NCBI GenBank assembly: GCA_002269645.1
Contig: NIVC01000865.1
Span: 1-47,572 of the forward strand
From: Macrostomum lignano
Lineage: Eukaryota
Direction of reading: 5' to 3'
Length of the DNA stretch: 47,572 nucleotides
Shown: piece by piece, positions 12,801 through 47,572 of the stretch
How positions within the stretch are numbered: the first letter of the stretch is position 1
How the letters are laid out: each line of letters opens with the position of its first letter
Position numbers and translations under genes: made by a program
The notes under the pieces: model-generated
The model's input: the letters and a program-made list of their open reading frames with translations, nothing else
Database searches by the model: none
Told to the model about the DNA's origin: nothing

Positions 12801-12933
12801 TTGTAAGCTTCGATTCCGCAAGTGCCTGTTACGAGCTATGTATGGTTCCATAGTTCTCAGTGGAGCCCGATCTGCCCATCAGTTGCATTCCGACTATGAG
12901 CACTCATCAATACTCACAAAAGACCCAAACATC

Positions 12934-17221: not shown

Positions 17222-17354
17222 TGTTGGATCACTCGGCTTGATCGCTGAGAATTGGTAAGTCTGCTAACTAGCTCTCTTGACATTTTTATCTTCCTTTCTC
17301 CTGCTACCTGACTGACCCTGACAGGTCAGGATGCAAATTGCAAGTCAGTGCCAG

Positions 17355-19836: not shown

Positions 19837-22800
19837 ATGAGGCATCTCGCTGCTGCATTCGCATTGCTGGCGGTGTCGCTCTGCTCAGCTGTGGCTTTGC
19901 CGGTCGCGTTGGCGCCCTTTCTATCCAAGGCTGCCATCATGACTGTAGCCAGAGACGCTGCCATTAACTCTGTCGTAAGCTCGCTTGTAGACAAAGTCTT
20001 GAACGGCGGCGGCGGCGGTGGCGGCGGCGCTGGTGGCGGCGGCGGCAATTTGATCACCAGCTTGGTCAATTTGAGAAAACAGAACGAAGAAACGCTCAAC
20101 GAGATGATGAAGTCTGTCGGCACCGCACCGAATCCGCTCATCACCCAGGAATCGATGAATAAAATGGTCAAAGACTGGTCCCTCCAACCACAGAAGGCGG
20201 GAACTCGCTCCATCAGCCTGCAGGCCGATCAGGGCTTTAACGGACTCGGAAACTACCAGCCTCCAGGATGGGTGATGACGGAGACTTTGAGCGGCCCAGC
20301 GAACAAAATACCGCAAATGACGGACGAGAAAGTACCGGTGTATCAATATCCGAAGGGAGTGGGTCCGATGCTGATGAACGGCTGTACGGGTCAATTCTAT
20401 TCAAAAAGTAGTCCCTGCAACTCCAGCAAGCTCGCTGCTCAGGGACACGCAGTCTGCCCGAACCTCCTGGAAGCCGCCGCCTACGTGGGCGTAGGTTTCG
20501 ACGGTCGCGGCTTCTACAAAATCGAGAGCCGCAGGGCCAGCCTAGTGCAGCGTTACTGCTCCAACAAGGCCAGCTTCCAAAACAAAGACGTTCCCGACTC
20601 GATGAACGTGTTCGGCATCTTTGAGACTACGGCAGAGACCAAGTCCTTCCAGTCTGGAGGGGAATACATGAACTACATCAGAGAGAAGGCCGGCCTGTCA
20701 AAACAGAGGAATCTATTTCGCAGTGAGGCCAGCAAGCACAGCACTTCCGTTTCAGCAACTATCAGCGCTTTTAGCATTTCCTCTGCTTCAAGTGCGACCG
20801 GTTACGGCGAATCGTCCTCGGTAAAATCTGGTGAATCGGTCTCGGAAAATGTTCAGACTGAGAGTTCCAATATGCGGCAGGGGGCTTCTAATACCTTTTT
20901 CGCCATCATGTATGTCAGCGTCATCATGTACGAGATCACTCTGGATGATGTGAAGCCGCAAGACATCAACTTGGCTGCTCTCAAGGACTACATGAGCTTG
21001 CCGGAGTCCTACTACTCGGTTGGCGCTGACGTCAAGTACCAGAACTTTCTGCTTCGCTGGGGCACGCACTTTATTCGGTCTGGAAAGTTTGGCGGCCAGT
21101 TGAAGATCACAAAGACTGCGAAGATGAACAAAGTAAAGTCTGTGGCGGAGTTCGCCAGCATCGCCGAGACAGAGTTCCAGTCAATGTTTGCGTCACTGCA
21201 GTCCAGGCACCTGCAGACAACAAGCAAAGTTAGCACTCCTTTTTATGGCGGACAGATAAAGTCTGAACATCAAAGCTCATCGGCAAAATCCGGAAATAGT
21301 CGCGTCAGCACAATGAACCAGAAAAACCAGCTATCTCAGAGCTCAAGCCAATCCGAGTTCACTCAAACTAGCGTCGAAGCTCAAGGAGGAACGCCGGAGA
21401 TCGCGGAGGCTCTCGTCGACTTTTACACGCCATCGTTCAAGTCTTTGTATCACAAATGGATCGTCTCAATCAGCGACTACGTGAAGCCGTTCGAGTTCCA
21501 GCTAAAGCCCATCGACCAGCTGTTCAATATGAACATGGACGACCTTTTCCTGTCTGGGAACTTCGATTTTGGCTGCATGGGAGGGGCTGGCAGCAGTAAC
21601 AAAGTAAAGATTTTGGTGGAGCCTGGAACCAATCGCAGATACCATCTTGATGAGCAGACTGAATTCCGAGACAACCGGACTGAGACTAGACTAGTGAAGA
21701 CCTACTGCAAGTACAGAGACCTGAATGAGTTCAAGACTGATCTGGACAGGCGAACAATCTCTCTGGAGAAAGCAGTTGCGGTCTACATGGCAGAAGGTCC
21801 GTTTCCGACGTCAACCTACGAGCTGGAAGCTGGGCAGTCTGGCTGCGAAGAGAAGACCTTGGCTCAAATCGACACACTGGACTCCAAGTCAAAGCCTCTG
21901 ACTTTTCTGCAGCTCAAAACAGCGCCGTTTCTAATTTCATTTGACCTGCCTGAGGAGATACCAAATTTGCTGCAAAGACAAGCAAAGTACGCTGTGGTCT
22001 ATCGAGGAGACAGATGGTTTGCCACTGAGCCAGGAAGCCATCTTGCTCACTTGTATGACGGTTGCCAATTGGGCAACTACAAGCTTGAAGAGCGTAAGAG
22101 CAAACCAAAAATCTGCATTTGGAACATTATCCTCACCTATGAGAACAACACGGGCTTTTTCTACATTGACCACAATGACTTTTCTGCATCTAAACGCCGC
22201 AACCCGTTGATTCCGGGCTGGATGTCTGGCTTAACCGTGGCCAGAGCTTCAAGTCTGAGCATATCGAAGGACCCTGCCTCGACTCCCGAGTCAGTGCCGT
22301 GCAACGTGAAGTGGCTAAACTCCCACAGACTCGATCCCAGCAAGAATGAGAGCTGTCTGCACTTTACGGCCGCCACTGAGGGAGACATCTTTGTGATTTT
22401 TGCATCCATTCCAAGAGATCAGTCAACGTGGTACTACCTGCAGATCAATGCAGAGGGTGTTCTGTTTTACAAGGCAATGAAGCTGAAAAAGCGAGACGAA
22501 AATAGGGGCATGGGGACACTGGGAGACAGGAACCTGTACCAGTCCTACTTTGTGTGCGTACTCCAGTCCAGTGGCTCAGTTCTGATGCAGTTTGGAAAGG
22601 CAGATGCCACAAGTGAAGTCGGCACTGTCTACTCTGGCTACAAGTTTCCGCAGGACAGCCAGTACAGTCGTTTATCTTTCTATACATTTGGCGCAGGCTC
22701 AAGGCCAGTGTCTCTGATGGACATTCGACTCACCAAGCAGATGCCAAAGGTTCGATGCTTGAATAATAACTACAAACAGGTGGATGGTCACTGCGTCCTT

Positions 22801-24535
22801 GACTGTCATGCAGAGTGTATCGACTGCACTTTAGCAAATGATGACATCAGCTGTTTCCAGTGTCGCAATGTCCGGATTGTGACGAAAAGTTATACTGGTG
22901 ACTCAGTAGTAAAATGCTTACCAGTGTGTCCGAGGGGCTTCCAACTAAGCGACAGGGCTGAGAAGCTGTGTGTTCCATGCAGCTCTGGCAGCTTCAAGAA
23001 CTCAACAGGCAACCAAAACTGCACGCCATGTGACCCTGGTACCTTCACCGAGTCTGAAGCACAAACAGAGTGTAAAAAGTGCAGCCCAGGAACTTTTACT
23101 GCCAACTGGAGATCTCAAACGTGCAAGAAGTGCGCAGAGGGCACGTCAGCGGCCTCAAAAGGATCTGTTTTGTGTAGGCCCTGCAGCCCCGGCTCGTTCG
23201 CGCAAGTTGGTCAGGCACAATGCACTCCCTGTCCGCTCGGCCAGTTCAACAGCGTAGATGGACAGTCTCGGTGCCAGCTGTGCTCTGTGGGCTATTTTGC
23301 TGCCACACCGGGCCTCACTTCTTGCGATCCGTGTCCCAACGGAACAAACAGTACAGCGGGCTCAGCGAGTTGCGAAAACCACTGCAGAAGGGGAGAGTTC
23401 AGTCCGAGCAAAGGCATCCCATGCAGAAAGTGTTCGGCCGGTACATTTGCAGCCAGTATGGGCGCGATGAACTGCACATTGTGCCCCGCAGGCACATTCG
23501 GTGCAAGAGACGGCCAGTCGGCGTGCACAGAGGCTCCGGCAGGATCGTACGTCCCACTTGCTGGATCGACAAGCAGCACTCCGTGTCCGATGGGCACCTT
23601 CAACCCGGAAACTGGAAAGTCCAGCCCGTCTGACTGCTTGGCATGCGCAGCTGGCAGCTTCTCAAACCGCACAGGATCGGCTGCATGCGTGCCGTGTCCC
23701 AAGGGCAGCTACCAGCCGCTGACAAGCCAGTCTGAGTGCAGGATCGCCAGCCCAGGCCGCTTTGTCGACTCGGAAGGTCAGCTGAAGCAGAAATTCTGTC
23801 CGTCTGCACATTATTCTGGAGTCGGCGCGTCCAAGTGCTGCGCCTGGAGCGACCAGTCTGTCTCTTTAGGCCTTCACATTGTGGGCGATGAGCTGACGGA
23901 TGCTTCAGCAGCGGGTCGGCTGTCACAAGTCTCTGAGTGCAAGTGCAATCCGCTTTTTACCATCAAGTCCGGCGTGAATAAATGCAATCCGTGTCCAGAG
24001 TCCGGGGCTGTGTTCACGGGACTGTGCTTTCGTGAGTAAACTCAAGGCTTTGCCATGTCAAATACGCTGGTAGCTGTGCGATGCATTTTGAAACAGCGCT
24101 GCCTCATTCAATTGTCACATTTCAGGTAGGCTGACTTTCGCATGCGGCACGAATGCTTCCGACTGCACGAACGCAGTGGATGGCAGCATGGTCACATCTG
24201 CATCCGTTACCGATGACCCAAATCCTAGCGATTCTCATCTGCAGTTCAACTTCAGCAGTGCTGTTGAGATCAAAGGATTTATTGTTTGGTTTCAAAACGA
24301 ACAGGAGGCAAAGTCCTTGTCTCGAATCGAAATCAGCGTGTACGGCACCGAGCCCGATGGAAACGCGTTCAGAAAGACTTGCTACAACTACAACATTTTG
24401 TACTTTGACGGAATGCACCTGCATGCGCACATCACTTGCGCAACTTCAAATGTGAGATTCTTCAGGATCAGCCCTCAGAACGGGGGCAGCACGAAGGCGA
24501 TAAAGTTTGCTGAAGTCGCAGTGTATGGAGTGTGA
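19837..24535 (+). CDS. Secreted MACPF-domain protein with furin-like and Ephrin_rec_like/GCC2-type Cys repeats and a C-terminal F5/8C/fucolectin-like domain, about 1534 aa, 2 exons
   Basis: Exons 19837-24031 and 24126-24535; the phase-1 intron (gtgagt..tttcag) keeps frame. Signal peptide MRHLAAAFALLAVSLCSAVA; MACPF signature WGTHFIRSGKFGG (21058-21096); repeated CPxGxF/Y..C..C units; last exon AVDG..LQFNF..EIKGF..RFFRI..EVAVYG. Confidence 0.85.
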
Positions 24536-24668: not shown

Positions 24669-25590
24669 TTGCTAATTCTGCCTCGCATTCTCCGCCATGC
24701 AAATTACATGATTCACTTTAAATCAGCTCTGATTCTCCCTCACATTCTCCGCCATGCAAATTACATGATTCTCTTTAAATCAGTTCTGATTCTCCCTCAC
24801 ATTCTCCGCTATGCAAATTACATGATTCTCTTTAAATCAGCTCTGATTCTCCCTCACATTCTCCGCCATGCAAATTACATGATTCACTTTAAATCAGCTC
24901 TGATTCTCCCTCACATTCTCCGCCATGCAAATTACATGATTCACTTTAAATCAGCTCTGATTCTCCCTCACATTCTCCGCCATGCAAATTACATGATTCA
25001 CTTTAAATCATCTGATTCTCCCTCACATTCTCCGCCATGCAAATTAAATGATTCACTTTAAATCAGTTCTGATTCTCCCTCACATTCTCCGCCATGCAAA
25101 TTACATGATTCTCTTTAAATCAGCTCTGATTCTCCCTCACATTCTCCGCCATGCAAATTACATGATTCACTTTAAATCAGTTCTGATTCTCCTCACATTC
25201 TCCGCCATGCAAATTACATGATTCACTTTAAATCAGCTCTGATTCTTCCTCACATTCTCCGCCATGCAAATTACATGATTCACTTTAAATCAGCTCTGAT
25301 TCTCCCTCACATTCTCCGCCATGCAAATTACATGATTCACTTTAAATCAGCTCTGATTCTCCCTCACATTCTCCGCCATGCTGATTACATGATTCTCTTT
25401 AAATCAGCTCTGATTCTCCCTCACATTCTCCGCCATGCAAATTACATGATTCACTTTAAATCAGCTCTGATTCTCCCTCACATTCTCCGCCATGCAAATT
25501 ACATGATTCACTTTAAATCAGCTCTGATTCTCCCTCACATTCTCCGCCATGCAAATTACATGATTCACTTTAAATCAGCTCTGATTCTTT
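24669..25590 (+). repeat. 57-bp tandem array, about 16 copies, nearly all containing the octamer ATGCAAAT
   Basis: Unit ctgattctccctcacattctccgccatgcaaattacatgattcactttaaatcagct. Confidence 0.95.
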
Positions 25591-27154: not shown

Positions 27155-27748
27155 TTACCGGCGGCGCAGTAGGGGTTGAAGAACATGCTTGAGAAAAAGG
27201 CTCAGAGAGGAAAACGCGCGCGAGAAAGGGCTGTTGCGAGCCCGACCATGTTGTCGCATCACCCAGTGGATGAACGAATTTAGATCCTTTCCACTAGCAA
27301 GTTTAAAAAACAGATAGAACAGAATCCAGGCTCCACAGTGGGCGGTACGGGGATCCTGCACCGCATAGCGCGTGTAACGCCAGTTTTTTGGATCTCCACA
27401 ATTTCGGCTCATCCACTGGGAGATTTCAGGCAGCGGGTGCAAACCTAGCGGATCAAAGTATTCACCTATCCTAGCTCGTCTAACAGCGCCAATAGGGCCT
27501 GCACAGACCCAGACAGCAACCCAGTGTTTTCCGGGCAAATTGCTAGGGTCCGTGTTTACGATGAAAAAATAGTTACGCGTGTCTTGAAAGTACGGACTCG
27601 TGTTTAGAGTAGGGATCGTTGGTAGAGAATTGCTTGGGTAAACTCCCATAAAAACTGCATCAGGATAAATACGCAATAGTTTTAGGCAGACCGAGCGCAA
27701 AAACACATTAGTTACGCCAGATAGGATAGTAGTGTTATCTACTTCCAT
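27155..27748 (-). CDS. Adenain-like cysteine maturation protease
   Basis: IVNTDPSNLPGKHWVAV (H), EYFDPLG (D), VQD..TAHCG (Q/C); ATG overlaps the capsid gene stop. Confidence 0.9.
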   Translation of the reverse strand: MEVDNTTILSGVTNVFLRSVCLKLLRIYPDAVFMGVYPSNSLPTIPTLNTSPYFQDTRNYFFIVNTDPSNLPGKHWVAVWVCAGPIGAVRRARIGEYFDPLGLHPLPEISQWMSRNCGDPKNWRYTRYAVQDPRTAHCGAWILFYLFFKLASGKDLNSFIHWVMRQHGRARNSPFSRAFSSLSLFLKHVLQPLLRRR

Positions 27749-29069
27749 ACAGATCCAGGTACCACGTCGCGGAACTCCGTCAAATGCAGCTGCTTGTCGA
27801 AAAGTCCGCCCACGATGACGTTGTAGACTTTGTCCGTGGCAGTCGCGAAGCGTAGTTCCAATCGTACATTGCCCTCTTTATATACCTGTGCGCCAGCTCC
27901 GACACCCACCTCACTACCCAGTCCGAAGGCGTAGATAGTGTAGCCGGCTTTGTACTCTGCCATCGTGAACCCCAAGTCGCGGTTACGCAGATGCAACCCC
28001 AGCTGTTGCAAAAACCACCCGTACTCCAAAACGCAGTCCCCACTATCGCTGTAGTCGGTTTCGAGGGGTCTTGTCGGCACCGGCTCCCCATTGACAAACA
28101 CCCCCAAACTGCTCAGGTTGGCATGTTCGAATCTAAACGGGTTTGTGTCCACACTTCCATTGAACGCTTTGTTGCTCACAAAGGCCAGAAGTAGAAGTTT
28201 CGGAACGCCGCTTGGGAAGAGATTTTCACGCGTGTAGCTAGACGTACCACTCGTAACAGTAAACGTGCTCATCTGTAGCTGATTTATTGGATAGATGGCA
28301 TTGTGCTGTTTCAACCCCGCAGCGTGCGCAGCGAGTACACTCGGCGAGGGGGATACGTAGCGTACACGGAGCTCGGCCTTTAGCACCTCTATCTCGTAGC
28401 TCTTTAGCGGGTTTTCACCTATCGCACCGACCATGAGGGCGAAGGCAGCGGAAGACGGAATCAATTTTATTCGTACAGGAGTTTTAGACAACAGAAACCG
28501 CGGCTGGCGGCACATGTCCAAGAACAAGGGCCCGATAAGCGGCACTCTCGACCCCCTGCTATCAATGCGCGTCGGCGTTTAGCGCCAACGTTCGCGTCGC
28601 CGGCTGAATGCATTTGTCCAGCTGTGTCTTTGTAGAAACCCCAGGGCGTTAGACCACAGGTTTGAGCATCCGATCCATATTCTAAAAGCGTCAGTAGCAT
28701 GGCTTTGTAGGGGTACATGAAGGTTCCGCCTTCGACTACAGTGTCTCCAATAGTTAGTTGTACATCGCGGAACAGGCTCGCGATAGGCAAATTAGTCAGC
28801 GCTACGTTGTTCTTCGTCGCATCGGCGGCTACTCCGTCCGAGTCTCGTACACGTATGGCCAGATTTAGAATCGTCTCTTGTAGATCCAGGTAGAGTGCAT
28901 CCCCTGCGGAGACGACTTCGAACTCGATTGGGGCACCTTTTGAGAGTCCGTGTTGCGGCTGAATGTGGGTATACTGGCTGTCCACTACACTGTACTGTAC
29001 AGCGGCTGCATCAAAAAGGGCCAATTCGCTTTTTAGTACTACACTGTCAGGGCCAAGCAACTGGTTCAT
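27739..29069 (-). CDS. Polinton major capsid protein (double jelly-roll, PY/hexon-like), about 443 aa, one 1-nt frameshift near 28545
   Basis: KSELALF..PIEFEV..YLDL..SLFRDVQL..YPYKA..FYKDTAG; after the shift GPLFLDMCRQ.RFLL..RIKLIPS..AFNGSVDTNPFRFEH..GNVRLELRF. Confidence 0.85.
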
Positions 29070-29077
29070 TTTCGGTT

Positions 29078-29530
29078 TTAAAGGAGACTAAACAGCGATT
29101 TAGCAGCAACGGCCTTGCGATTCCGCTTTTTCTTCACCCTTCGTCGCTTCTTCTCGGTTAGACCCTTTCCTCGCTGGGTTTTTGCCGGTTTTCCACGAGT
29201 GCGAGCTTTCTTACCCCGTTTGCTTATAGTTTTCCGGGGACGTTTTCTTCGGCTGCGTTTTGTGGGAACAGCTGCGCTCGACATCTTGTAACCGCCTCCC
29301 GTGTGCTTTCGTTTGCGATTAACGTTTGTTGTCTCGTTGCTAGTGCCTGATAGGTATTCCAAGCCCCGTGCCAAAAGATCCTTTCCCGCACTCCGCATAA
29401 CCGGGATCAACACTCGATTAGAGAGGTTGGAAAGGAATCCATAGCCTTCGTAGATCGGAATCGCTCGGGCGGAGGATCCTCCCCCGCTTTGAGTGGGTCC
29501 GGAATAGAATCGGTATATTGGATCCATCAA
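29078..29530 (-). CDS. Small, very basic putative core/DNA-condensing protein with G-x-G protease-site motifs
   Basis: QSGGG, YEGYGFLSNL..IPVMRSAGK, TGGGY, QRGKG; K/R-rich C-terminal half. Confidence 0.7.
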   Translation of the reverse strand: MMDPIYRFYSGPTQSGGGSSARAIPIYEGYGFLSNLSNRVLIPVMRSAGKDLLARGLEYLSGTSNETTNVNRKRKHTGGGYKMSSAAVPTKRSRRKRPRKTISKRGKKARTRGKPAKTQRGKGLTEKKRRRVKKKRNRKAVAAKSLFSLL

Positions 29531-29564
29531 ATTTTTAATTGTTATTATGTTCCCATTTCACAGT

Positions 29565-30803
29565 TTACTTATAAACGCGCCGAAAAAGCCGTCGAGTTCG
29601 CTCATCCAACTCGCCTTCTTTCAACCACTGATTCCTAAAGGCCTCAACTCCTTGCCATTTCACTAAATACCGCCACTGACCGTCTGAGTCTTTTTCGTAA
29701 GCGTCTACACGCTCGATGACTGACGGCTCCGTACTTTCTTTTGCTACACGCTGTAGTTCTCCCTCATTGAAGTAACCCTCTAGTGTGCTATTTCCGTCTT
29801 CCGGATTCTCTAGTTTATACGACGCTGCTCGGCGAGGATTCGTAGCACGGATCCGAAACACGGTGTTGCTCCACACTGTCGAATAGCCCTTCTCGAAGGC
29901 ACCCCGCTGTCGTGCGATTCTTACCCAGTCCCCTACCTTTAGTGTTGATAGAGGCTGCTGCGAGGCTTCATGCTCTATAATCTCAGACCCGATGATTCCT
30001 TGTAGACGCGGATCCACCGCCGTGTTGTGAGGACTCTGACCAAACAGCGCCCGGTGAGGGCTTGAGTTCAAATTTCGTTCCATTTGGGGTAGAATGTCAT
30101 ACCAGCGTTCTAGGTTTCGAGCCCGAAAATAACGGCTGAGCCGCTCTTTCAGAGTACGGATTAACCTTTCAGCGATCGCAGCCTTGTAATTGCTTTGGCT
30201 AACAAAAAAGCGTACACCCGCCCGTTTTAGTACAGCTTGAGTTTCACGCCCTAGGAACTCCTTTCCCGCGTCACCCTGAAGATAGAGAGGTCGGAAGCCT
30301 TCACGAAACAGATTTTCAAGTGCGGCGCCCACCTCTTTAGCAGTTTTTGTTCGTAGAGGTCGCAGACGTACTTCGCGAGTGAAACAATCGATCAAAACGA
30401 GGATGTAGCGGTATCCCTTGTTTTCTGACTTGTATTGAGGGAGATCAGCCAGGTCGATTTGGAATTGAAAACCAGGGATATGTGGTACACCAATTCTGCG
30501 GGTTTTGAATATTCGTTTAGTTTTGCGAAACAGGTTATATTCTTTGGTATCCCGGGCCCATTCGTCAACGATTTCTGCCGCTCGTTTTGATGCTAGTGAC
30601 GGAAACTGGGTTTTAACATGTCTTAATAGCTGTTGCTTACTTCCCGCAAAAGCAGTAGGGCGGTCCAAATCGTAAAATTGTCTGTCTAAGAAGTTCTTGA
30701 CGTCTAGCGAGTTGTTCTTTCTAGTCCGTTCTTTTGCGTTTTCGGACAGCTGCCGGCTCTGGTGTTTCGCTTTTCGCATCTGAGGTCTCTTTTTCGCTGC
30801 CAT
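29565..30803 (-). CDS. Retroviral-type (rve) integrase with C-terminal chromodomain
   Basis: FQIDLADL..YILVLIDCF (D), LQGDAGKEF (D), AAIAERLIRTLK (E); YLVKWQG..NQW; first ATG at 30803. Confidence 0.92.
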   Translation of the reverse strand: MAAKKRPQMRKAKHQSRQLSENAKERTRKNNSLDVKNFLDRQFYDLDRPTAFAGSKQQLLRHVKTQFPSLASKRAAEIVDEWARDTKEYNLFRKTKRIFKTRRIGVPHIPGFQFQIDLADLPQYKSENKGYRYILVLIDCFTREVRLRPLRTKTAKEVGAALENLFREGFRPLYLQGDAGKEFLGRETQAVLKRAGVRFFVSQSNYKAAIAERLIRTLKERLSRYFRARNLERWYDILPQMERNLNSSPHRALFGQSPHNTAVDPRLQGIIGSEIIEHEASQQPLSTLKVGDWVRIARQRGAFEKGYSTVWSNTVFRIRATNPRRAASYKLENPEDGNSTLEGYFNEGELQRVAKESTEPSVIERVDAYEKDSDGQWRYLVKWQGVEAFRNQWLKEGELDERTRRLFRRVYK

Positions 30804-31020
30804 CGGTTTTTGTATCGGTGATTCCTCCCGCACCGCTGCTCTGTGGCAAGTTATCAGTTGATGCAGAGCGCGTCACCGTCATGCAGCACCTAATGTTCTG
30901 TATGGTGATATCGCCCGCGTCGGGAGTGTCCTCGTTATGGTGGAGTGCCCCGCCTAAGCAGCCTTGCAAAAGTCTCACAACCAAATGAAAAACAAAGCGT
31001 AAAATTTCGCGTAGTTCCAT
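30721..31020 (-). CDS. Small hypothetical Polinton ORF (99 aa) overlapping the integrase start
   Basis: True ATG; fills the gap between ORF235 and integrase; LGG motif; ends in NLS-like RKRKR. Confidence 0.45.
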   Translation of the reverse strand: MELREILRFVFHLVVRLLQGCLGGALHHNEDTPDAGDITIQNIRCCMTVTRSASTDNLPQSSGAGGITDTKTDGSEKETSDAKSETPEPAAVRKRKRTD

Positions 31021-31098
31021 TATCAGAGTGTGTTGATACTCAATCCGCGATGCGTCCGACCAGTTAGCTTATAGCTGCTACAATATTTAACTACAAAC

Positions 31099-31806
31099 TT
31101 AGCTTGTCAATGTCTCGTAATTTTCTAGGAAATCCATTTCTTCGTCCCGTGTTTCTTTGTCCTCGGTAAAGGCGGGTGGTAGCTCTTTCTCTGCTGCAGC
31201 TGACAATTCCGTTCGAAATTGTTTTCCGACAAGCTGAGGATCCGCTTTTCGTTGACGCAGGTAACTTAAAAAGTTTTCCAACCCGCCTGGCAGGCGCCCC
31301 CCATGCCTCTTCAGGGGTTTGTCGCGAACTACGTAGTCCATCAGATCGCGCATCTCCGTTTCGGTTAGTTCGGTGCCGTTTGCCGCCAGATTTGCTTTCT
31401 CATTTTCGATGAAAGTTTTAAGACGTCGCCAACGTGCCTGAAGTGCTTTTGGAATGCGTGTTGTTTCGCTCTCTTCCTCCGCGCTATTGACTAACGGCTC
31501 TTCACTCGCTTGAGGGTTATCATCTGGCTTCAAAAACTTCTCGCGTGTTTGTAGGAGCTTGCTTTCCATTCTGTTTCTTGCCAGACGAGCAGGCGAATTC
31601 GGGGTAGATTGATCCGTAGCAATAATCTCGTCTAACCCATCGATTTTCTGTTTCATCCGCACGAGTTCTTGTCCCATCGTGTCATTTGGCATCTCCAAAA
31701 CCTTTGCTCGTTCGTCAGCGCACTTGTTTTGCGCGACCAGCTGCGAATATTCTGAGATGGGAATAACAACCATCTTTTGCAGTGCCTCGTGTGAGCGAGT
31801 TCCCAT
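31099..31806 (-). CDS. Hypothetical Polinton protein (235 aa)
   Basis: ATG 4 nt after the pX-like stop; QKMVVIPISEY resembles the KM.L.P N-terminus of a common Polinton ORF; predicted coiled-coil composition. Confidence 0.65.
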   Translation of the reverse strand: MGTRSHEALQKMVVIPISEYSQLVAQNKCADERAKVLEMPNDTMGQELVRMKQKIDGLDEIIATDQSTPNSPARLARNRMESKLLQTREKFLKPDDNPQASEEPLVNSAEEESETTRIPKALQARWRRLKTFIENEKANLAANGTELTETEMRDLMDYVVRDKPLKRHGGRLPGGLENFLSYLRQRKADPQLVGKQFRTELSAAAEKELPPAFTEDKETRDEEMDFLENYETLTS

Positions 31807-31810
31807 ATTT

Positions 31811-32263
31811 TCAGTTTCGTTTGTTCTGTATGCTGCGCACGAGACTAGCAGCACCCGCAGCTGTACCTGCAATGCCGGAGGTGATTCCAAGAGCCGTGGT
31901 GATGGATGGTAATGCTGCCGTTACTGCGGCCACAATCGGCGCGAGGAAAGGCAGAAAACCTCCGTGTTGTACAATGATTCTTTTTTTCTCAGTCAGAGAA
32001 TGACCACCCGAAATGAGCTTCTGAATAGGTCGACAATGTTTTTCTAATTTTTTCCGGTCCGCGTGGCGGAGTGGCACTCGCTGCCGCACGATATTGATCA
32101 AGAACTCGACTATACAACGCACTTCTGCTAGACTGAGAGTCTTAAGGAAATCTCGTCTGGTTTTTCTATCACGCAGTCGAGCAACAATGTGCAGAATTTC
32201 CGCGCAGTTTGTGATCGAAGATGCACTCTTTCTCGCTTTTTGCGTTAATCGTCGTGCGGCCAT
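31811..32263 (-). CDS. Polinton basic protein with adenovirus pX-like C-terminus (150 aa)
   Basis: K/R-rich body, then QHGGFLPFLAPIVAAVTAALPSI..GIAGTAAGAASL. Confidence 0.7.
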   Translation of the reverse strand: MAARRLTQKARKSASSITNCAEILHIVARLRDRKTRRDFLKTLSLAEVRCIVEFLINIVRQRVPLRHADRKKLEKHCRPIQKLISGGHSLTEKKRIIVQHGGFLPFLAPIVAAVTAALPSITTALGITSGIAGTAAGAASLVRSIQNKRN

Positions 32264-33116: not shown

Positions 33117-33852
33117 AAATATGAACTCGCTCACACGAGGCACTGCAGATGGTTGTTGCAAGGCGAAACTATAGGGCCAGGGAATGTATTGTACAATTAA
33201 ATTATCATATTTCTATATGCAAGTACTTAAACTGATTCAGAGCGAACAACAAGCTACTCTTAGTAGTAGCAGTAGTAGCATTTTGAACGCACATGCAATG
33301 CAAGCGAGCAAAGTACAATGCTCGACTAAACTACTAAAAACGGGGCCAGATAAGGAGTACCCCTTGATCCAGCTAAGCAGGACACGAACCATCAAGACAG
33401 GTCTTGACGTAGAAAAAGTTGTTTTAGGAAGGTCTCCGGGATTCGTTCTCAATGAGAACTGAACAGTTGAATTCCGATCAGAAGAATCTGCGTTTTATGT
33501 CAATTCTGATTGGCTGAGCCGATTTGTTAAAACACACGTAGAACTTTTCGATTGGCTGAAAGCAAGCATGAAAATACAAGGTCATACATGTAATATATTA
33601 TTGAGATAAAAGGGAGAGTGTAATGGGATAATCCGCGAAAAAAGGAATAAAACAAATATATTTTAGAGGAAAAGATTTAAAGCATGTAAAATTGATTTTA
33701 TTCGAAATAAATCTGGTTTCTGTCGTTATTTTTACTGATTGTTGCGTAACTAAGTGCATCTATACTATCGGCAGCGTATTTCATTGAACTGATATTTAAT
33801 CATTATCTTCCACAAACCGTTAAATATATAGTTGTCTTTCAGATTAAAATAC

Positions 33853-34861
33853 CTAACGTTTCTTCCTCCTCTTGAAACGGCGAATCTCCAATTCACACAA
33901 AGCGTCAATAGAAGGATCATTGAATAGACCAGGAGCAGCAGCAGGCAGCTCAGGCTCATCGATCAGTTCAGCCGGTTCTTCGCTCTCCTGCCGGTCGTGA
34001 CTGCATCGACACACGTCCGAAATGACGTAACTCACACAGTTGGTTAGGGAGCCCCCGTGGCACCCTTCCCTACAGGGCCTGCAGACTACTTGATTCGAAC
34101 TGCTGTGGTAAAGTTCCTGCACAAACCGAGCGTCCTTGCACGCAAAAAAGTCAGCAGTACATTTGGCGTATTTCTGAACAGTTGCACTGAGCCCGTTATT
34201 GTCAACCATGATCTCCAGCAGGTCCATCAGAGGATCGAACAGGCCGTACGAACTGCGATTCGAAAATATGTTTTTAAGTGTCCAGAAGGATAACATTAGG
34301 AAAATTTATTTTAATTTTGACTCACCCATTCGTTAAGCTAATTTTGCAGCACTTCTTTGCAAGGGCCGACGAAGATGAGCTCCAGAAGAAAGCACCGAGA
34401 GGGAGTCTTGGAATCTGTAGTACAGCAAGGCGAGCTTGGTAGCTCTTCTTTTCTCCTTTTCCATTGATAACCTCGCGAACAAAATGTTCGCAGTTATTCT
34501 TCATTAGATTGTAGTTGGTCTCTCCGACTCGTTTTAGGCAGTCCAGCACTACTCGAGCTCGCTTCTCGGCGCTACACTTGCAGTGGAAAACTCGAATGGG
34601 AGAAAGTCCGACAACGTCGCGGAAGTCATCGATTCGAACGGAAACTCTTGCATTCGAAGCAACTTCGCCCGAGAAGTGACACAGGAGAGGCACCGGGTCC
34701 GATTGCCCGCCTCTGGGGAAGGCCCAACCTAGGAAGATGGCGAAGTGGCCAAGAGCGACTCGATTAAAGCTGATGGCGGAGCCTGGGACCATGGCTTTCA
34801 GAGCGTCATCGGCCCGCGATGCTGAAAAATCGTCGTAGCCATTAGTAAAACCGACACACAT
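33853..34861 (-). CDS. LRAT/PLAAT-family (H-box/NCEHF) protein fused to a degenerate UBR-box-like Zn finger, 2 exons, 311 aa (copy A)
   Basis: Exon 1 34861-34326 (HFAIFLG, LCHFS, NNCEHF); 73-bp intron gtgagt..cgcag; exon 2 34252-33853 in frame (SYGLFDP..KCTADF..VVCRPCREGCH..CRC). Confidence 0.8.
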
Positions 34862-34970
34862 TTTTCTAAACTTTTGTGTGAAATACACTTGATGGCGTGA
34901 AAACAAACAGCCTTACTACACTAATACAATAGAGATATAATAGAGAGAAATATGGAACCAAAGACTTGAA

Positions 34971-34990
34971 GGTATTTCCATGGAATTTCC
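34971..34990 (-). promoter_or_regulatory. Tandem Rel/kB-like motif GGAAATTCC-AT-GGAAATACC
   Basis: 110 bp upstream of the copy A ATG, in the divergent A/B intergenic region; near-identical motifs upstream of copies C and E. Confidence 0.6.
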
Positions 34991-35390
34991 TTTAGTTCTA
35001 TCTTCTACATCTTTCAAAAACATCAGACTCGCCTTTCACCACCGTACAATGGTATAGAAAGGTATTTTACTTTTAAAGCCACAGGTAGCATAAAAGCGTA
35101 CTCGCTGTACAAAAGGACGCAAACAAATTCGCAAGTGCGTCCAAGGTCTTTCACGCGTCACTTTAGTTCTGTACAATCTGCGTATGACCAACTCAGCATG
35201 TAGGTTGTTGCGCTTCAGTCGAATTTCAGTCGAAAAAGCAAGTAGATTGCAGATTGGCTTGCACAAACAATGAACTTGGCGTAGTGCTCTAGAAAAAAAA
35301 CTGCAGCAGAGCGTACTAGATAGTTTATCAGCCAACAAACTGTCTCGGCTGTCCAAAAAGGATCTTGTTTACCACATTTCACCTCAAGTC

Positions 35391-36376
35391 ATGTGCGTCG
35401 GCTTTACAAACGGCTACTCGGACTTTGCTTCGGACAGAGTCGAAGAAGCGATCGTTGCCGCCGTGCCCGGGTCCGCCGTCAGCTTCAACAGAATCGGCTT
35501 CTTTCACTTCGCCGTTTTCCTGGGCTGGGCCTGGCCCAAGGGCGACGACTCGGAGCCCATCCCGCTGCTGTGCCACCTCTCCGGAGACGCCAGCACGAAG
35601 CCGGTGGCGTCTGTTCGACTTGACGACTTCAGAGACATCGTCCAGAGCTGCACCATCCGGGTGTACAACTGCAAATGCAGCGCGAGCAAGAGATCTCAGG
35701 TGATCCTCAATTGCCTCTATCTAGTTGGCAAGGCTGGCTACAATCCGCTGACCAACAACTGCGAGCACTTTGTGAGAGAAGTGATTTGCGGTCAGAGCAC
35801 CAGCTATCAGGCCGTTTGGACTCTTGCAGCTCCGTTAATTCAGCTGCCGCGAATTCTTCTGGGTAGCGCTGTAGTCGGGGCCGCCACTTCGTCTGCTTCA
35901 TCGAACTGCGCATCCAAATTTGAGGAGAATCGGTAAATGTTGAGAAATTCTTTACTTTTTCTGCATCCTGATGCATGGTTATTCACTGCCTGCTTTCCCA
36001 TTTCAGATCACTGGGACTTCTTAATCCGGAAAGAGATCTAATAGAGATTATATTGTCAAAGCATGGTTTACATTTACAAGGCGTCAAGTTGAATTCTGTC
36101 TGCACAAGGGAATTCGGAGGCTTAAGCACGTTTCCAATGCAGTTTCTCTACACCTGCAGAAGCTGCAGCGGCAGTGAAAAGATGGCGGTGTGCCGGCCAT
36201 GCCAGAAGCTTTGCCATGCAAAATGTATTTTTCGAACTGGAATTGTGTCTGAGAATGTGTGCCGGTGCTCTCACGCCATGAAATCCGAGGCAGTGCAACT
36301 GCCTCTGCAACTGGATCTTCAAGAAGAATCTACTTCATCAGTCGAATGTGACGGCTCTCTCTCATCTTCTTGTTAG
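35391..36376 (+). CDS. LRAT/PLAAT-family protein fused to a UBR-box-like Zn finger, 2 exons, 303 aa (copy B)
   Basis: Exon 1 35391-35932 (HFAVFLG, LCHLS, NNCEHF); 74-bp intron gtaaat..tttcag; exon 2 36007-36376 in frame (CTREF..FPMQFLYTCRSC..AVCRPCQKLCH..CRCS). Confidence 0.82.
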
Positions 36377-36456
36377 CCCTTATTTTACAAAAAACACATT
36401 GTTTTACACAACTTTATGCATTGGACTACACTCTGTTTATCAGTGAGAAAGATTCT

Positions 36457-36578
36457 GGGCCCGTTCTATGAAGCCATCGTAAGATAAGATCGTTCTTAGC
36501 TCCTACATGTATCTCCGCAGTGAAAAAGTTCCGACTTACGATCGAACCTACGCTACGACAGCTTTATAGTACGACCCC
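36457..36578. mobile_element. Short MITE-like element with imperfect ~26-bp terminal inverted repeats
   Basis: gggcccgttctatgaagccatcgtaag vs revcomp of right end ggggtcgtactataaagctgtcgtag. Confidence 0.45.
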
Positions 36579-37337
36579 ATTATTCTTAAGCTATGAATCT
36601 TTTTAACTGATATTTTAGTAATAATCCCAGGCTTCATAATGCTTTCAGTTTACTGTACAGCTTTTATTATTGTTAAAGACAATTAAGACGTTTTCGATGG
36701 TTTTGAAGCAAATCTTTTTAACTAACCACTTACACGTGCTTTTTACGGCACTTTCTGAGTGTATGCGACAGAATAAACTAAAGAGCCACCAGTCTACTAA
36801 GACGTTTATAAAATTGAGTAGCGGTCCAAATTTACTGCTAGTAGCTCGTAGTAGCTATTGTAAAATAATGCAAATAGACCAATTTAATTCCAACAGTATA
36901 CTAGTGGTTTGTTTCCGTGTTGTGTACGCAGCTAGTCAAAAAGGAAATACAAAAAGCTTACTAAACTATTGTTTGCAATAGTATAGAGAGACAGTATACC
37001 CACTGTCTATGAAAGTTCTGAAATATGCATGCCAGGTGATTAAAGCAACTAATATGACTGAGCAACTCGCTGTCCATGCACTCGTCATTGCGAGCTAGAG
37101 GATTTCTAAAATGGGCACGGAAGTACGGAATGAAAGGAAAGATAAGTAGAAGCCTTTACAACTGTGGCAGTCGGGCTTGAAAGTACGAAATGCAAAAAAA
37201 CATTTACATTCTGCATTTAATGTACGTTATTGGTTCCGACAGTCTGTGTGCTAATACTAGCTGTGGTAAGCTTGGGAATAAGGAACTTCATTTTTCGATT
37301 TTCTTTCAAGCTGAACTGTAAATATCTATGACTATAA

Positions 37338-38632: not shown

Positions 38633-39675
38633 ATGTGCGTTGGCTGGACTAACGGCTACAGAGACTTCGAATCTGTCGAATCTGCTTTGAAAGCCATGAC
38701 TCCAGGCTCGGCCATCAGCTTCAACAGAATTGGCTTGTATCACTTTGCGATCTACTTGGGCCTAGCTTTTCCCAGGGGCGGGAATTCGGGGCCGATTCCT
38801 CTGATCTGCCACCTGTCAGGTGGTGCCAGCACGCAGCCAAAAGCATCCGTTAGACTGGATGACTTCAGAGCCGTTGTGCAGAATTCTACTATTAGAGTGT
38901 ACTGCTGCAGTTGCAGTGAGAGCAAAAGGGCACGAGTGATCTGGGAGTGCCTCTGGAGAGTTGGCGAGGAAGGGTACGACCTGTTCTTTAAAAACTGTGA
39001 GAGCTTTGCGCGCTATGTGATCAACGGGGTATCCGTCAGCTATCAATCTCTTTGGACTGCGGTGGTACCATTTATTCAGATTCCCCGGTTTATTATCGGA
39101 GGAATCTCCGGAGGATCATCCTCTTCGTTGGCCTCATCAAGCTGCGCATCGTACTGCTTAAACAATTTGTAAGCTTGTGTGACGCATGTTGGTAATGGAT
39201 AAATAATCAGCGGTCCCAGTGCGTGACAACGATTGTCTGGCGAGCGCCGGTAGGCGCGAGCCATAGACAAATTGTTGTCACGTGATGCGACCGCTGATTC
39301 TTTGCATTGTTTTTCTGTTTGACGATCCTACAGACAATGCATTGTTTGTAGCAATGGATTGTTCTGCACTAAAAATGTAAATAATGATCGTCAAATTGCT
39401 AAACAATGAGCATTTTATGCTAAAAAGCTGAGCATTTTACTACGTCGTATAAGAGAATATTGACTACTTCTTTCTGTACTTTAATTTATTTCGCAATTTA
39501 AAGAAACAACCGAAAATCTTTCAGAGACTACGGACTGATGGACCCCGAGGGTGATATGCTCTTGATTTCGGTCTCGAGTGGCGGCCTGCAGGCATCTGTA
39601 AAAGCTTTCCCCTCTTCGTATTTTTTTCGACTCGCTGAATTTGCTACATTTCTTATGGAGAGTTTTTCAGACTGA
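38633..39675 (+). CDS. LRAT/PLAAT-family protein (copy C), 2 exons, no Zn finger found
   Basis: Exon 1 38633-39168 (HFAIYLG, ICHLS, KNCESF); phase-2 intron gtaagc..tttcag (356 bp); exon 2 from 39525, DYGLMDPEGDMLLISV..GL, homologous to exon 2 of A and B; stop at 39673-39675. Confidence 0.75.
39205..39299. other. Intronic inverted-repeat hairpin (~34-bp imperfect stem)
   Basis: aatcagcggtcccagtgcgtgacaacgattgtct pairs with agacaaattgttgtcacgtgatgcgaccgctgatt. Confidence 0.65.
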
Positions 39676-46862: not shown

Positions 46863-47153
46863 ATGTGCGTCGGATTCACCAACGGCTATCAGGACTTCCC
46901 GGCTAGCGACACCGACCCCGCCTTGGCCACCATGGTCCCCGGCTCCTGCGTCAGCTTTGACCGAATATCGCTGTTTCATTTTGCCATCTTCCTGGGCTGG
47001 GGCTGGCCGGAAGGCAGCGCCGAGTCCCGGCCACATGGTCTGCCACTTCTCAGTCGGGTCCACGTCTGGGTCTGAAGCGGCTTCCGTTCGATTGGACGAC
47101 TTGCGGGAGGTTGTGCAGGTGAATATGCTATCTATCCATCTATCTATCTATCC

Positions 47154-47207
<54 letters not shown>

Positions 47208-47232
47208 TATCTAATCTATCTATCTATCTATC

Positions 47233-47274
<42 letters not shown>

Positions 47275-47572
47275 GAATTTTAAGGGCTCCACAGTCCGCG
47301 TGTATCGCTGCACCTGCAGCACAACGACTCGAGCTCGGGTCGTGTCGGACTGCTGCAGCGGGTCGGTGAGTCCGGCTACAGCGCCCTCACTAACAACTGC
47401 GAGCACTTCGTTCGCGGATCATCACAGGCGAGAATGTCAGCTACCAGGCCTTCTGGACGGTGGCGATGCCAGTTGTGCAGCTGCCCCCGTCTGCTAATGG
47501 GAGGCCGCTAAACGGAACCGCATCATCGATTTCTTCCGTCAGCAGTCGATGCGGATCGGGAAATCTGTCTGG
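46863..47572 (+). CDS. LRAT/PLAAT-family protein (copy E) with an extra intron and several frameshifts; runs off window end
   Basis: MCVGFTNGY..HFAIFLG..VCHFS..VRLDDLREVVQ | intron 47119-47284 | GSTVRVYRCTCS..NNCEHFVR. Confidence 0.7.
47129..47274 (+). repeat. (TCTA)n microsatellite filling the intron of LRAT copy E
   Basis: Near-pure TCTA run between gtgaat and ttttaag. Confidence 0.95.

What the first reader, a model, noticed from the sequence alone, without database searches (positions are those of the whole stretch)
33853..36376. Hidden LRAT/PLAAT enzyme plus UBR-box-like zinc finger fusion created by a stop-skipping intron
The ORF track shows two ORF pairs. In both, a phase-2 donor sits directly at the apparent stop (GG|gtgagt; CG|gtaaat), and a 73-74-bp intron joins in frame to a homologous exon (S-x-G-L-x-D/N-P). 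The products are 311 and 303 aa: LRAT domain with His/His/Cys triad, hydrophobic segment, Ser linker, Zn finger, acidic tail. The copy B finger (C-x8-FPMQFLYTCRSC..AVCRPCQKLCH..CRC) follows the FBXO11-type UBR box pattern as I recall it. I know no described protein coupling a PLAAT-type lipid acyltransferase/phospholipase to a UBR box. Inference: a membrane-remodelling or protein-acylating enzyme with a substrate-sensing module. Intron retention would give a short, finger-less isoform.
Basis: partly seen in the sequence, partly recalled or inferred. Interest (0 to 1): 0.85.

Follow-up and report, generated by a model that had tools for sequence, protein, structure and literature searches.

The report
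Flatworm LRAT enzyme with UBR-like finger
Two neighbouring, already annotated genes of the flatworm Macrostomum lignano each join a PLAAT/LRAT-type lipid-enzyme domain to a divergent UBR-box-like zinc finger through one ordinary short intron, a domain combination I found in no other organism but whose function is untested.

Summary
Copy A (- strand, exons 34861..34326 and 34252..33853, 73-bp intron) gives 311 aa. Copy B (+ strand, exons 35391..35932 and 36007..36376, 74-bp intron) gives 303 aa.

Neither gene is hidden. The window is M. lignano contig NIVC01000865.1, and both spliced products are exact GenBank entries (PAA75733.1; PAA75734.1/PAA49923.1). That annotation was built from RNA-seq.

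The stop at the donor follows from a phase-2 intron starting GTAA or GTGA. The same intron occurs in every family member examined.

Exon 1 is an LRAT domain (Pfam 44.5 and 39.8 bits, cut-off 24.3).

The exon-2 finger misses Pfam's zf-UBR cut-off (23.6 vs 25.2 bits). A profile of six paralogous fingers matches the UBR4 box (E 3.5e-8) and the FBXO11 box (E 6.7e-6), and hhalign gives 98% probability. It is a divergent UBR4/FBXO11-type box.

Copy B keeps all zinc-ligand positions; copy A has lost one zinc site. In both, the Asp that holds an N-degron's amino group is Arg, so N-degron sensing is unlikely.

Among 1.84 billion representative proteins, only M. lignano paralogues have LRAT plus this finger.

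Verdict: a real, lineage-specific new domain architecture of moderate interest.

The parts
34326..34861 (-). Copy A exon 1 (aa 1-179, phase-2 end). It encodes the LRAT domain (aa 26-135, nt 34457..34786) with H39, H62 and C124 (NNCEHF). It also encodes the conserved, moderately hydrophobic segment (about aa 140-163, nt 34373..34444).
   Evidence: Pfam LRAT scores 44.5 bits against a cut-off of 24.3.
34253..34325 (-). Copy A intron, 73 bp, GTGAGT...CGCAG, phase 2.
   Evidence: The exact spliced product is PAA75733.1.
33853..34252 (-). Copy A exon 2. It holds the SYGLFDP..DLLEI motif and a degenerate UBR-like finger (aa 210-264, nt 33997..34161). The finger keeps C210, C236, C239, C243, H244, C260, C262 and H264. 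It lacks the CxxC pair and the H-x2-C cysteine. An acidic stretch and a polybasic end (RRFKRRKKR) follow.
   Evidence: No Pfam zf-UBR hit.
34862..35390 (.). 529-bp spacer between the two divergent start codons. It is presumably a shared bidirectional promoter region.
   Evidence: Coordinates. The promoter role is inferred only.
35391..35932 (+). Copy B exon 1 (aa 1-180 plus 2 nt). It encodes the LRAT domain (aa 26-136, nt 35466..35798) with H39, H62 and C124. It also encodes the hydrophobic segment (about aa 138-165, nt 35802..35885).
   Evidence: Pfam LRAT scores 39.8 bits.
35933..36006 (+). Copy B intron, 74 bp, GTAAAT...TTTCAG, phase 2.
   Evidence: The exact spliced product is PAA75734.1/PAA49923.1.
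36007..36376 (+). Copy B exon 2. It holds the SLGLLNP..DLIEI motif and a UBR-box-like finger (aa 213-270, nt 36101..36274). The candidate ligands are C213; C231, C234; C243, C246; C250, H251; C254; C266, C268, H270. An acidic, Ser-rich tail follows.
38633..39675 (+). Copy C, a third paralogue. Exon 1 is 38633..39168, with the same phase-2 donor. The intron is 39169..39524. Exon 2 is 39525..39675 and carries the DYGLMDPEGDML motif but no finger. The product would be 228 aa. It is not among the called genes and is frameshifted in the duplicate contig.
46863..47522 (+). Copy D, a fourth LRAT paralogue. It is interrupted by frameshifts and a (CTAT)n array at 47128..47274, so it is probably a pseudogene. 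It runs towards the window end.

Best explanation
Copies A and B are two ordinary, head-to-head, two-exon paralogues of a Macrostomum lignano-specific expansion of the LRAT/PLAAT family. This family consists of papain-like NlpC/P60 enzymes with the permuted His-His-Cys order.

Shown:
- Exon 1 encodes an apparently catalytically intact LRAT domain plus a conserved, moderately hydrophobic segment.
- A phase-2 intron, conserved across the family, joins it to exon 2.
- Exon 2 encodes a conserved 'GLxDPxxDLxEI' hairpin-like motif and a divergent UBR box of the UBR4/FBXO11 subfamily.
- Copy B keeps ligands for all three zinc sites; copy A has lost one site.

Inferred:
- C124 forms an acyl-thioester with a phospholipid acyl chain, with H39 as the base, as in PLAAT/LRAT. 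The acyl group is then hydrolysed or transferred.
- The finger lacks the Asp that anchors an N-terminal amino group, and the protein has no E3 ligase context. It therefore most likely serves as a zinc-stabilised protein-protein interaction or oligomerisation module, not as an N-degron reader.
- The apparent stop at each donor is only the TAA or TGA inside GTAA or GTGA read in phase 2.
For: Gene structure and annotation:
- Gene structure.
- Exact deposited products and both genes called on NIVC01000865.1.
- The GenBank annotation was derived from RNA-seq (StringTie/TACO plus a mapped de novo transcriptome, then TransDecoder): PMC5730564.

LRAT domain:
- It scores above the Pfam cut-off in A, B and C.
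- phmmer aligns H39 and NCEHF of B with H23 and NCEHF of PLAAT4.

Finger:
- zf-UBR is the best Pfam hit for four finger-bearing paralogues (23.6, 21.8, 18.6 bits).
- The four-finger profile against the PDB gives UBR4 at E 5.3e-6.
- The six-finger profile gives UBR4 at 3.5e-8 and FBXO11 at 6.7e-6. All top 23 hits are UBR boxes.
- hhalign against 15 genuine UBR boxes gives 97-98% probability.
- The top 10 Foldseek hits are all UBR boxes.
- C1, C4, C5, C6, H7, C9, C10 and the CxCxH His are invariant in six fingers. They map onto the FBXO11 ligands C835, C865, C868, C872, H873, C888 and C890 (PMC5606531).

Family context:
- Conserved phase-2 donor.
- Only M. lignano proteins combine both domains.
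Against: - No enzymatic, zinc-binding, localisation or expression data exist for these proteins. I saw no junction reads myself.
- zf-UBR is below Pfam's gathering score in every copy and absent in copy A.
- The finger-only AlphaFold model is mediocre (pLDDT 66.7), and no Foldseek hit reaches E < 0.001.
- The full-length model is unusable (pLDDT 47.4).
- The second catalytic His (H62) is assigned only by invariance among paralogues. phmmer did not align it to PLAAT H35.
- The last UBR ligand (FBXO11 C899) has no positional equivalent. I propose the invariant His of CxCxH in its place.
- Two paralogues on another contig keep F/Y-C-D-C, so a peptide-end-binding ancestry is not excluded for the family.
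Confidence: 0.72

Rival explanations
1. The finger is a working UBR-type recognition module that senses a substrate, such as an N-terminal degron or another short peptide signal. It then directs the LRAT enzyme to acylate or remodel that target.
For: - The finger is homologous to UBR4, which does bind N-degrons (PMC10687169).
- Paralogues on L005 retain F/Y-C-D-C.
- All family members start Met-Cys. Met-Cys is a classical pro-N-degron start, from my own knowledge.
Against: - In A and B the amino-group-binding Asp (UBR2 D150, UBR4 D1715) is Arg. It is His in P0003 and Gln in P0004 (PMC10687169).
- The Phe before it is Val in A and B.
- FBXO11's box does not bind N-degrons (PMC5606531).
- The C-terminal third of the UBR box is missing: Pfam positions 58-69 are unmatched.
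- Copy A has lost one zinc site.
Confidence: 0.1
2. The finger is a C1 (phorbol-ester/diacylglycerol-type) lipid-binding domain that brings the enzyme to membranes. The UniProt name of paralogue P0003 suggests this.
For: - UniProt calls A0A1I8FYU4 a 'Phorbol-ester/DAG-type domain-containing protein'.
- A lipid-sensing domain would fit a lipid enzyme.
Against: - No Pfam C1 hit appears for any finger even at E <= 10.
- The only C1 chain seen in the PDB profile search (ARHGEF2) scored E 2.6, against UBR4 at 5.3e-6.
- Only 5-9 residues separate the two CxxC pairs. From my own knowledge of the PROSITE C1 pattern, that gap is about 9-14 residues and the pattern also has a leading His, which is absent here.
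Confidence: 0.02
3. The LRAT-like domain does not act on lipids. It acts as a papain-like peptidase or de-conjugating hydrolase in a proteolysis or ubiquitin-like pathway. That would explain why the same LRAT subfamily is fused to a UBR box here and to a caspase domain in sister genes.
For: - Copy A has a weak PPPDE/Peptidase_C97 hit (18.6 bits, E 0.0018).
- M. lignano P0009, P0154 and P0010 are fusions of LRAT and Peptidase_C14 from the same subfamily.
- These fusions lie next to LRAT-finger genes on L005.
Against: - The PPPDE hit is below its cut-off (29.2 bits) and covers only the Cys helix.
- LRAT is the only family above its cut-off.
- The closest solved relatives are the PLAAT3/4 phospholipases.
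Confidence: 0.1
4. The finger is largely vestigial. This is a fast-evolving, partly decaying, lineage-specific gene cluster, and the C-terminal module is being lost, so the fusion has little functional meaning at least for copy A.
For: - Copy A lost three ligands of one zinc site.
- Copy C has no finger, is not annotated, and is frameshifted in the duplicate contig.
- Copy D is frameshifted and holds a microsatellite.
- A and B share about 34% identity in exon 2 against about 57% in exon 1.
Against: - Eight ligand positions plus T33, Q45 and L47 are invariant across six fingers that are only 29-51% identical overall.
- At least six intact finger-bearing paralogues exist.
- Both window genes are intact and identical in a second contig.
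Confidence: 0.12

Closest known systems
PLAAT1-5 / LRAT (Pfam PF04970; solved PLAAT3 4DOT, PLAAT4 2LKT/7ZOT)
   Same: - Permuted papain-like domain with the order His...His...Cys.
- NCEHF catalytic motif.
- First His in the same register.
- Domain at the N-terminus, followed by a hydrophobic stretch.
   Different: - An 11-residue longer hairpin precedes the putative second His.
- A family-specific C-x-C motif (CKCS) and a Met-Cys start.
- The hydrophobic segment is internal, carries conserved Q/P/R residues, and is not clearly transmembrane.
- A zinc finger follows it. PLAATs end at the anchor.
UBR box, subfamily 2 (UBR4, UBR5, FBXO11/UBR6, UBR7; Pfam PF02207; 8J9R, 5VMD, 7YRB)
   Same: - Ligand register: C ... 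Q-x-[LWF]-Y-x-C-x-x-C ... C-x-x-C-x3-C-H-x2-[HC] ... C-x-C.
- Includes the extra Cys before the His that defines subfamily 2 (PMC10687169, PMC5606531).
- Significant profile matches.
   Different: - Below the Pfam cut-off.
- H-x2-H is H-x2-C.
- The C-terminal ligand (FBXO11 C899) is absent, perhaps replaced by the His of CxCxH.
- F-C-D-C is V-C-R-C in the window copies.
- It is not part of an E3 ligase.
M. lignano LRAT-caspase fusions (PAA65113.1, PAA73134.1, UniProt A0A1I8GH60 'Caspase-8-like')
   Same: - Same LRAT subfamily: Met-Cys start, C-x-C motif, NNCEHFVR.
- Same species.
- Genes adjacent to LRAT-finger paralogues.
   Different: - The C-terminal module is a Peptidase_C14 caspase domain, not a finger.
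- There is no hydrophobic segment.
Multi-UBR-box repeat proteins from metagenomic eukaryote contigs (P0029, P0032, P0040, P0043)
   Same: These are the most similar fingers in the 1.84-billion-protein library. They pass the zf-UBR cut-off at 57-104 bits.
   Different: They have tandem fingers, no LRAT domain, and keep CDC/CNC-G motifs.

Membership tests
LRAT/PLAAT (PF04970, NlpC/P60 superfamily) | Match to the family HMM above the curated cut-off | tested here: met
   A 44.5 bits, B 39.8 bits, C 40.3 bits, against a cut-off of 24.3.
LRAT/PLAAT (PF04970, NlpC/P60 superfamily) | Catalytic Cys in the NCEHF motif at the start of a helix | tested here: met
   NNCEHF at aa 122-127 in A and B. It aligns to NCEHF of PLAAT4. 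The low-confidence model shows a helix at 124-132.
LRAT/PLAAT (PF04970, NlpC/P60 superfamily) | First catalytic His (PLAAT H23) | tested here: met
   H39 aligns with H23 of PLAAT4. It is invariant in the paralogues.
LRAT/PLAAT (PF04970, NlpC/P60 superfamily) | Second His (PLAAT H35) | tested here: inconclusive
   H62 (LLCH) is invariant in the six sequences of A1. However, phmmer places PLAAT H35 in an insertion, and the model is too poor to check the geometry.
LRAT/PLAAT (PF04970, NlpC/P60 superfamily) | Circularly permuted order (His before Cys) | tested here: met
   The order H39, H62, C124 is read directly from the sequence.
LRAT/PLAAT (PF04970, NlpC/P60 superfamily) | C-terminal transmembrane anchor | tested here: inconclusive
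   The best 19-residue Kyte-Doolittle mean is 1.53 in B and 0.90 in A. The segment is internal and contains conserved Gln, Pro and Arg.
LRAT/PLAAT (PF04970, NlpC/P60 superfamily) | Phospholipase A1/2 or acyltransferase activity through an acyl-Cys intermediate | not testable with these tools
   This needs a biochemical assay.
UBR box (PF02207) | Match to the family HMM above the curated cut-off | tested here: not met
   B scores 23.6 bits (E 5.7e-5) against a cut-off of 25.2. A has no hit. The L005 paralogues score 21.8 and 18.6 bits.
UBR box (PF02207) | Profile-level homology to solved UBR boxes | tested here: met
   UBR4 at E 3.5e-8, FBXO11 at 6.7e-6, and UBR5/UBR1/UBR2/PRT6 next. hhalign gives 98.1% probability.
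UBR box (PF02207) | Ligand set for three zinc ions (subfamily-2 pattern) | tested here: inconclusive
   B has 10 of the 11 positions in register, and the last is possibly replaced by the invariant CxCxH His. A lacks C2, C3 and C8, which form one site (ligand map from PMC5606531). Zinc binding itself was not tested.
UBR box (PF02207) | UBR-box fold | tested here: inconclusive
   The model has pLDDT 66.7. The top 10 Foldseek hits are all UBR boxes (FBXO11 probability 0.96, TM 0.40/0.48), but all have E > 0.3.
UBR box (PF02207) | N-degron pocket residues (Phe-Cys-Asp-Cys; UBR2 F148/D150, UBR4 F1713/D1715) | tested here: not met
   The motif is V-C-R-C in A and B, Q-C-H-C in P0003, and F-C-Q-C in P0004. 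It is retained as F-C-D-C and Y-C-D-C in two L005 paralogues. Residue roles are taken from PMC10687169.
UBR box (PF02207) | Part of an E3 ubiquitin ligase (RING, HECT, F-box or similar in the same protein) | tested here: not met
   LRAT is the only other Pfam domain.
C1 / phorbol-ester-DAG domain (PF00130) | HMM match and the H-x12-C-x2-C-x13/14-C-x2-C-x4-H-x2-C-x7-C spacing | tested here: not met
   No C1 hit at E <= 10. The ARHGEF2 C1 chain scores E 2.6. The CxxC pairs are only 5-9 residues apart.

The most novel reading that the evidence does not exclude
M. lignano has evolved a family in which one LRAT-type 'head', always starting Met-Cys, is wired to alternative effector or sensor tails: a UBR-type box or a caspase domain. 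In this reading, the UBR-like finger recognises a peptide terminus, possibly the family's own processed Cys N-terminus. This would couple terminus sensing to lipid acyl transfer or membrane attack. Together with the caspase-fused sisters, it would form a flatworm-specific cell-death or immune effector system.
Probability: 0.08. Interest if true: 0.65.

Novelty: new variant of a known kind. Interest (0 to 1): 0.3.

Why it matters
If the fusion is functional, it is the first case of a UBR-type box outside the ubiquitin-ligase context attached to a PLAAT/LRAT-type lipid enzyme. It would show that the UBR4/FBXO11-type box can be reused as a general interaction module.

Together with the LRAT-caspase fusions of the same species, it points to lineage-specific domain shuffling around an LRAT head. 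M. lignano is a regeneration model with transgenesis and RNAi, so the function is testable.

There is also a practical annotation point. The finger is unannotated in GenBank and Pfam, and one paralogue is labelled 'Phorbol-ester/DAG-type' in UniProt. That label should probably read UBR-like.

Otherwise the finding is ordinary: correct, already deposited gene models with a normal intron.

Tried and rejected
- A word-indexed homologue search with the four-finger alignment found nothing at E <= 0.01.
- The full-length AlphaFold model was too poor to use (pLDDT 47.4). I did not run a fold search on it.
- I looked for intron-less transcript contigs as direct splice evidence, using exact-product look-ups of P0003, P0004 and P0005. 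None is on record.
- I looked for expression data. 'Mlig006329' occurs in no paper text and in none of the held supplements of PMC5816591.
- I tried to name the organisms behind the two non-lignano relatives, L003 (ENA ERZ25074695) and L004 (Logan SRR13325274). A neighbouring 510-aa ORF matched only itself.
- A finger HMM on six-frame translations found no finger in L003 or L004.
- The two near-identical M. lignano contigs have no substitutions across the two genes, so they give no information on selection.
- I rejected the C1-domain reading, the transmembrane-anchor reading as unproven, and the idea that the stop at the donor is a special 'stop-skipping' device.
Full report
**What is there.** Reading 33400..36900 and listing ORFs shows two ORF pairs in divergent orientation.

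- Copy B (+): exon 1 is 35391..35932, ending ...AATCG|GTAAAT in phase 2. The intron is 35933..36006 (74 bp, ...TTTCAG). Exon 2 is 36007..36376. The product is 303 aa.
- Copy A (-): exon 1 is 34861..34326, ending ...AATGG|GTGAGT in phase 2. The intron is 34325..34253 (73 bp, ...CGCAG). Exon 2 is 34252..33853. The product is 311 aa.

The two proteins are about 57% identical in exon 1 and about 34% in exon 2. The start codons are 529 bp apart.

**Source and prior annotation.** Copy B is 100% identical over all 303 residues to 'hypothetical protein BOX15_Mlig006329g2 [Macrostomum lignano]'.

The window is the start of contig NIVC01000865.1 of assembly GCA_002269645.1, with identical coordinates. 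Genes with 311-aa and 303-aa products are called there.

The exact products are PAA75733.1 (copy A) and PAA75734.1/PAA49923.1 (copy B). UniProt names them 'LRAT domain-containing protein'.

According to the genome paper, that GenBank annotation was not ab initio. It was a genome-guided transcriptome (StringTie plus TACO on RNA-seq, with a BLAT-mapped de novo assembly), and ORFs were called by TransDecoder (PMC5730564). The spliced forms therefore already rest on transcript evidence, although I did not see reads myself. The genes are not hidden.

**The 'stop-skipping' intron.** In a phase-2 intron, the read-through codon after the split one is bases 2-4 of the intron. With donors GTAA.. or GTGA.., that codon is TAA or TGA. 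The stop at the donor follows from the donor consensus.

The same phase-2 donor-at-stop occurs in:
- a third paralogue in the window, copy C (TT|GTAAGC);
- a fourth, copy D (CG|GTGAGT);
- relatives in two other assemblies, L003 (AA|GTAAGC) and L004 (AC|GTGAGT).

It is an old, ordinary family intron.

**Exon 1.** Pfam LRAT (PF04970) scores 44.5 bits in A and 39.8 bits in B, against a cut-off of 24.3. The closest solved chains are PLAAT4 and PLAAT3.

- H39 aligns with PLAAT H23, and NNCEHF (C124) aligns with NCEHF.
- A second invariant His (H62, 'LLCH') sits after a longer hairpin. It is a plausible equivalent of H35, but the alignment does not show this.
- After the domain comes a conserved segment, SYQ..W....P..Q.PR...G. 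It is moderately hydrophobic (19-residue Kyte-Doolittle maximum 1.53 in B, 0.90 in A). I would not call it a transmembrane helix.

**Exon 2.** It starts with a conserved motif (S-x-G-L-x-D/N-P-x-x-D-L-x-E-I ... G-L) that the finger-only model folds as a beta-hairpin. The finger follows.

Pfam zf-UBR is the best hit but falls below its cut-off:
- B: 23.6 bits, E 5.7e-5, cut-off 25.2.
- A: no hit.
- Two further paralogues: 21.8 and 18.6 bits.

Family profiles settle the homology:
- Four fingers against the PDB give UBR4 at E 5.3e-6.
- Six fingers give UBR4 at 3.5e-8 and FBXO11 at 6.7e-6, followed by UBR5, BIG, UBR1, UBR2 and PRT6. All top 23 hits are UBR boxes. PHD and MYND fingers appear only at E >= 0.1.
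- hhalign against 15 genuine UBR boxes gives 97.3% and 98.1% probability.

The AlphaFold model of the finger is mediocre (pLDDT 66.7). Its ten best Foldseek matches are all UBR boxes, but none is significant on its own (best E 0.33, TM 0.40/0.48). The fold test is consistent but not decisive.

**Zinc ligands.** The ligands of B are C213; C231, C234; C243, C246; C250, H251; C254; C266, C268. They map in register onto FBXO11 C835; the CxxC pair of its Cys2-His2 site; C865, C868; C872 and the adjacent His; the second His of H-x2-H; C888, C890.

The FBXO11 ligand numbering is as described in PMC5606531. The Cys preceding the His is what defines the UBR4/5/6/7 subfamily in PMC10687169.

The last ligand (FBXO11 C899) has no counterpart. 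The His of C-x-C-x-H is invariant in six fingers and may replace it.

Copy A has lost three of the four ligands of one site, the Cys2-His-Cys site that corresponds to the Cys2-His2 site of other UBR boxes. It keeps the ligands of the binuclear cluster.

**What the finger probably does not do.** In UBR2 and UBR4, the N-degron's alpha-amino group is held by the Asp of F-C-D-C and the backbone of the Phe (PMC10687169). The window copies read V-C-R-C, P0003 reads Q-C-H-C, and P0004 reads F-C-Q-C.

FBXO11's box does not bind N-degrons (PMC5606531), and no E3 ligase domain is present.

One caveat applies. Two paralogues on another contig keep F-C-D-C and Y-C-D-C, so the ancestral finger may have been more canonical.

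The UniProt name of P0003 suggests a C1/DAG domain. That reading fails: no C1 hit appears at E <= 10, a C1 chain scores E 2.6, and the spacing is wrong.

**Family and distribution.** A profile of the full-length proteins was searched by HMMER against 1.84 billion representative proteins. It found only two representatives with the whole architecture (504 and 458 bits), both from M. lignano. The next hit scores 127 bits.

Among all proteins retrieved, only M. lignano sequences match both an LRAT HMM and the finger HMM. No paper in the library mentions LRAT or NlpC together with the UBR box.

The window itself holds two more family members:
- Copy C (38633..39168 plus 39525..39675) has the same intron and the GLMDPEGDM motif but no finger. 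It is not annotated and is frameshifted in the duplicate contig.
- Copy D (46863..47522) has frameshifts and a (CTAT)n insertion.

A second cluster lies on NIVC01001035.1 (L005). It holds two more LRAT-finger genes next to an LRAT-caspase fusion. The same LRAT subfamily is fused to Peptidase_C14 in P0009, P0154 and P0010.

Exon-1-like ORFs of the same subfamily, including the hydrophobic segment, occur in two assemblies of unknown organisms (L003, L004). No detectable finger lies nearby.

**Verdict.** The structural observation is confirmed and the domain calls are essentially right. The framing as hidden, as a stop-skipping device, or as a substrate sensor is not.

What remains of interest is a lineage-restricted domain architecture that, as far as I could find, has not been described. 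It combines a PLAAT/LRAT enzyme with a UBR4/FBXO11-type box, inside a dynamic gene family that also produced LRAT-caspase fusions.

Function is inferred only. The likely mechanism is a Cys124/His39 acyl-enzyme acting on phospholipids, with the finger as a zinc-stabilised interaction module. I rate it as a new variant of a known kind, with moderate-to-low interest (0.3).

Noticed in passing
L005 (NIVC01001035.1) 10001..13406; proteins P0009, P0154, P0010: M. lignano encodes fusions of the same LRAT subfamily with a caspase (Peptidase_C14) domain. P0010 keeps QACRG. P0009/P0154 read FLQTSQ at that position, so the catalytic Cys appears to be lost, as in a FLIP-like pseudo-caspase. The gene lies directly upstream of two LRAT-finger paralogues at 14063..15860 and about 16494..18080.
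   Followed up: partly
window 34859..34861, 35391..35393, 38633..38635, 46863..46865; also L003 5749, L005 14117: Nearly every member of this LRAT subfamily examined starts Met-Cys (MCVGF/MCVGW/MCL/MCM); L004 reads H-C-V-G-W with no Met at that position. M1, C2 and V3 are invariant in alignment A1. A conserved Cys2 could be an acylation site or a pro-N-degron, which is curious in a protein that carries a UBR-like box.
   Followed up: no
window 38633..39675: An unannotated third paralogue (copy C) has an intact LRAT domain (40.3 bits), the family intron (356 bp here), and a short exon 2 without a finger. The copy on the duplicate contig L002 is frameshifted.
   Followed up: yes
window 46863..47522 (tandem repeat 47128..47274): A fourth paralogue (copy D) is broken by frameshifts and interrupted by a (CTAT)n microsatellite of about 36 copies. 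The L002 version is more intact.
   Followed up: partly
window 19837..24039 (+): A single 1400-aa ORF carries a MACPF/perforin domain (49 bits), six Ephrin_rec_like repeats and an NCD3G-like stretch. This is a pore-forming-type protein gene 10 kb from the LRAT cluster.
   Followed up: no
window 27155..32263 (-): A run of long minus-strand ORFs includes an integrase core domain (rve, 42 bits, 29565..30833). It is probably a retrotransposon remnant.
   Followed up: no
window 15631..16850 and 24675..25588: There are two large tandem arrays: 37 bp x 33 copies (93% match) and 57 bp x 16 copies (96% match). Strong negative GC skew at 16-20 kb and 24-26 kb coincides with these arrays and with CT-rich low-complexity runs at 17702..18156.
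   Followed up: no
L002 16470..18537: On the duplicate contig, a 620-aa annotated protein combines many CxxC zinc-ribbon-like pairs with a more distant LRAT domain (..GSNCEHF..). It is another LRAT plus zinc-module architecture in this species.
   Followed up: no
window 33853..33880 (copy A C-terminus): Copy A ends in a polybasic tail (RRFKRRKKR) after an acidic stretch. The two near-identical contigs differ by an indel around 33853..33868, at the stop codon and the last codons of the tail. The tail could be a nuclear-localisation or membrane-binding signal.
   Followed up: no
window 4668..5381 (-): An ORF fragment matches the N-terminal domain of calcium-activated chloride channel regulators (CLCA, 37 bits).
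   Followed up: no
protein P0003 (UniProt A0A1I8FYU4): This paralogue is named 'Phorbol-ester/DAG-type domain-containing protein', but its finger matches only zf-UBR-type profiles here. It also lacks the NCEHF region of the LRAT domain, through a 27-residue deletion or a gene-model error.
   Followed up: partly
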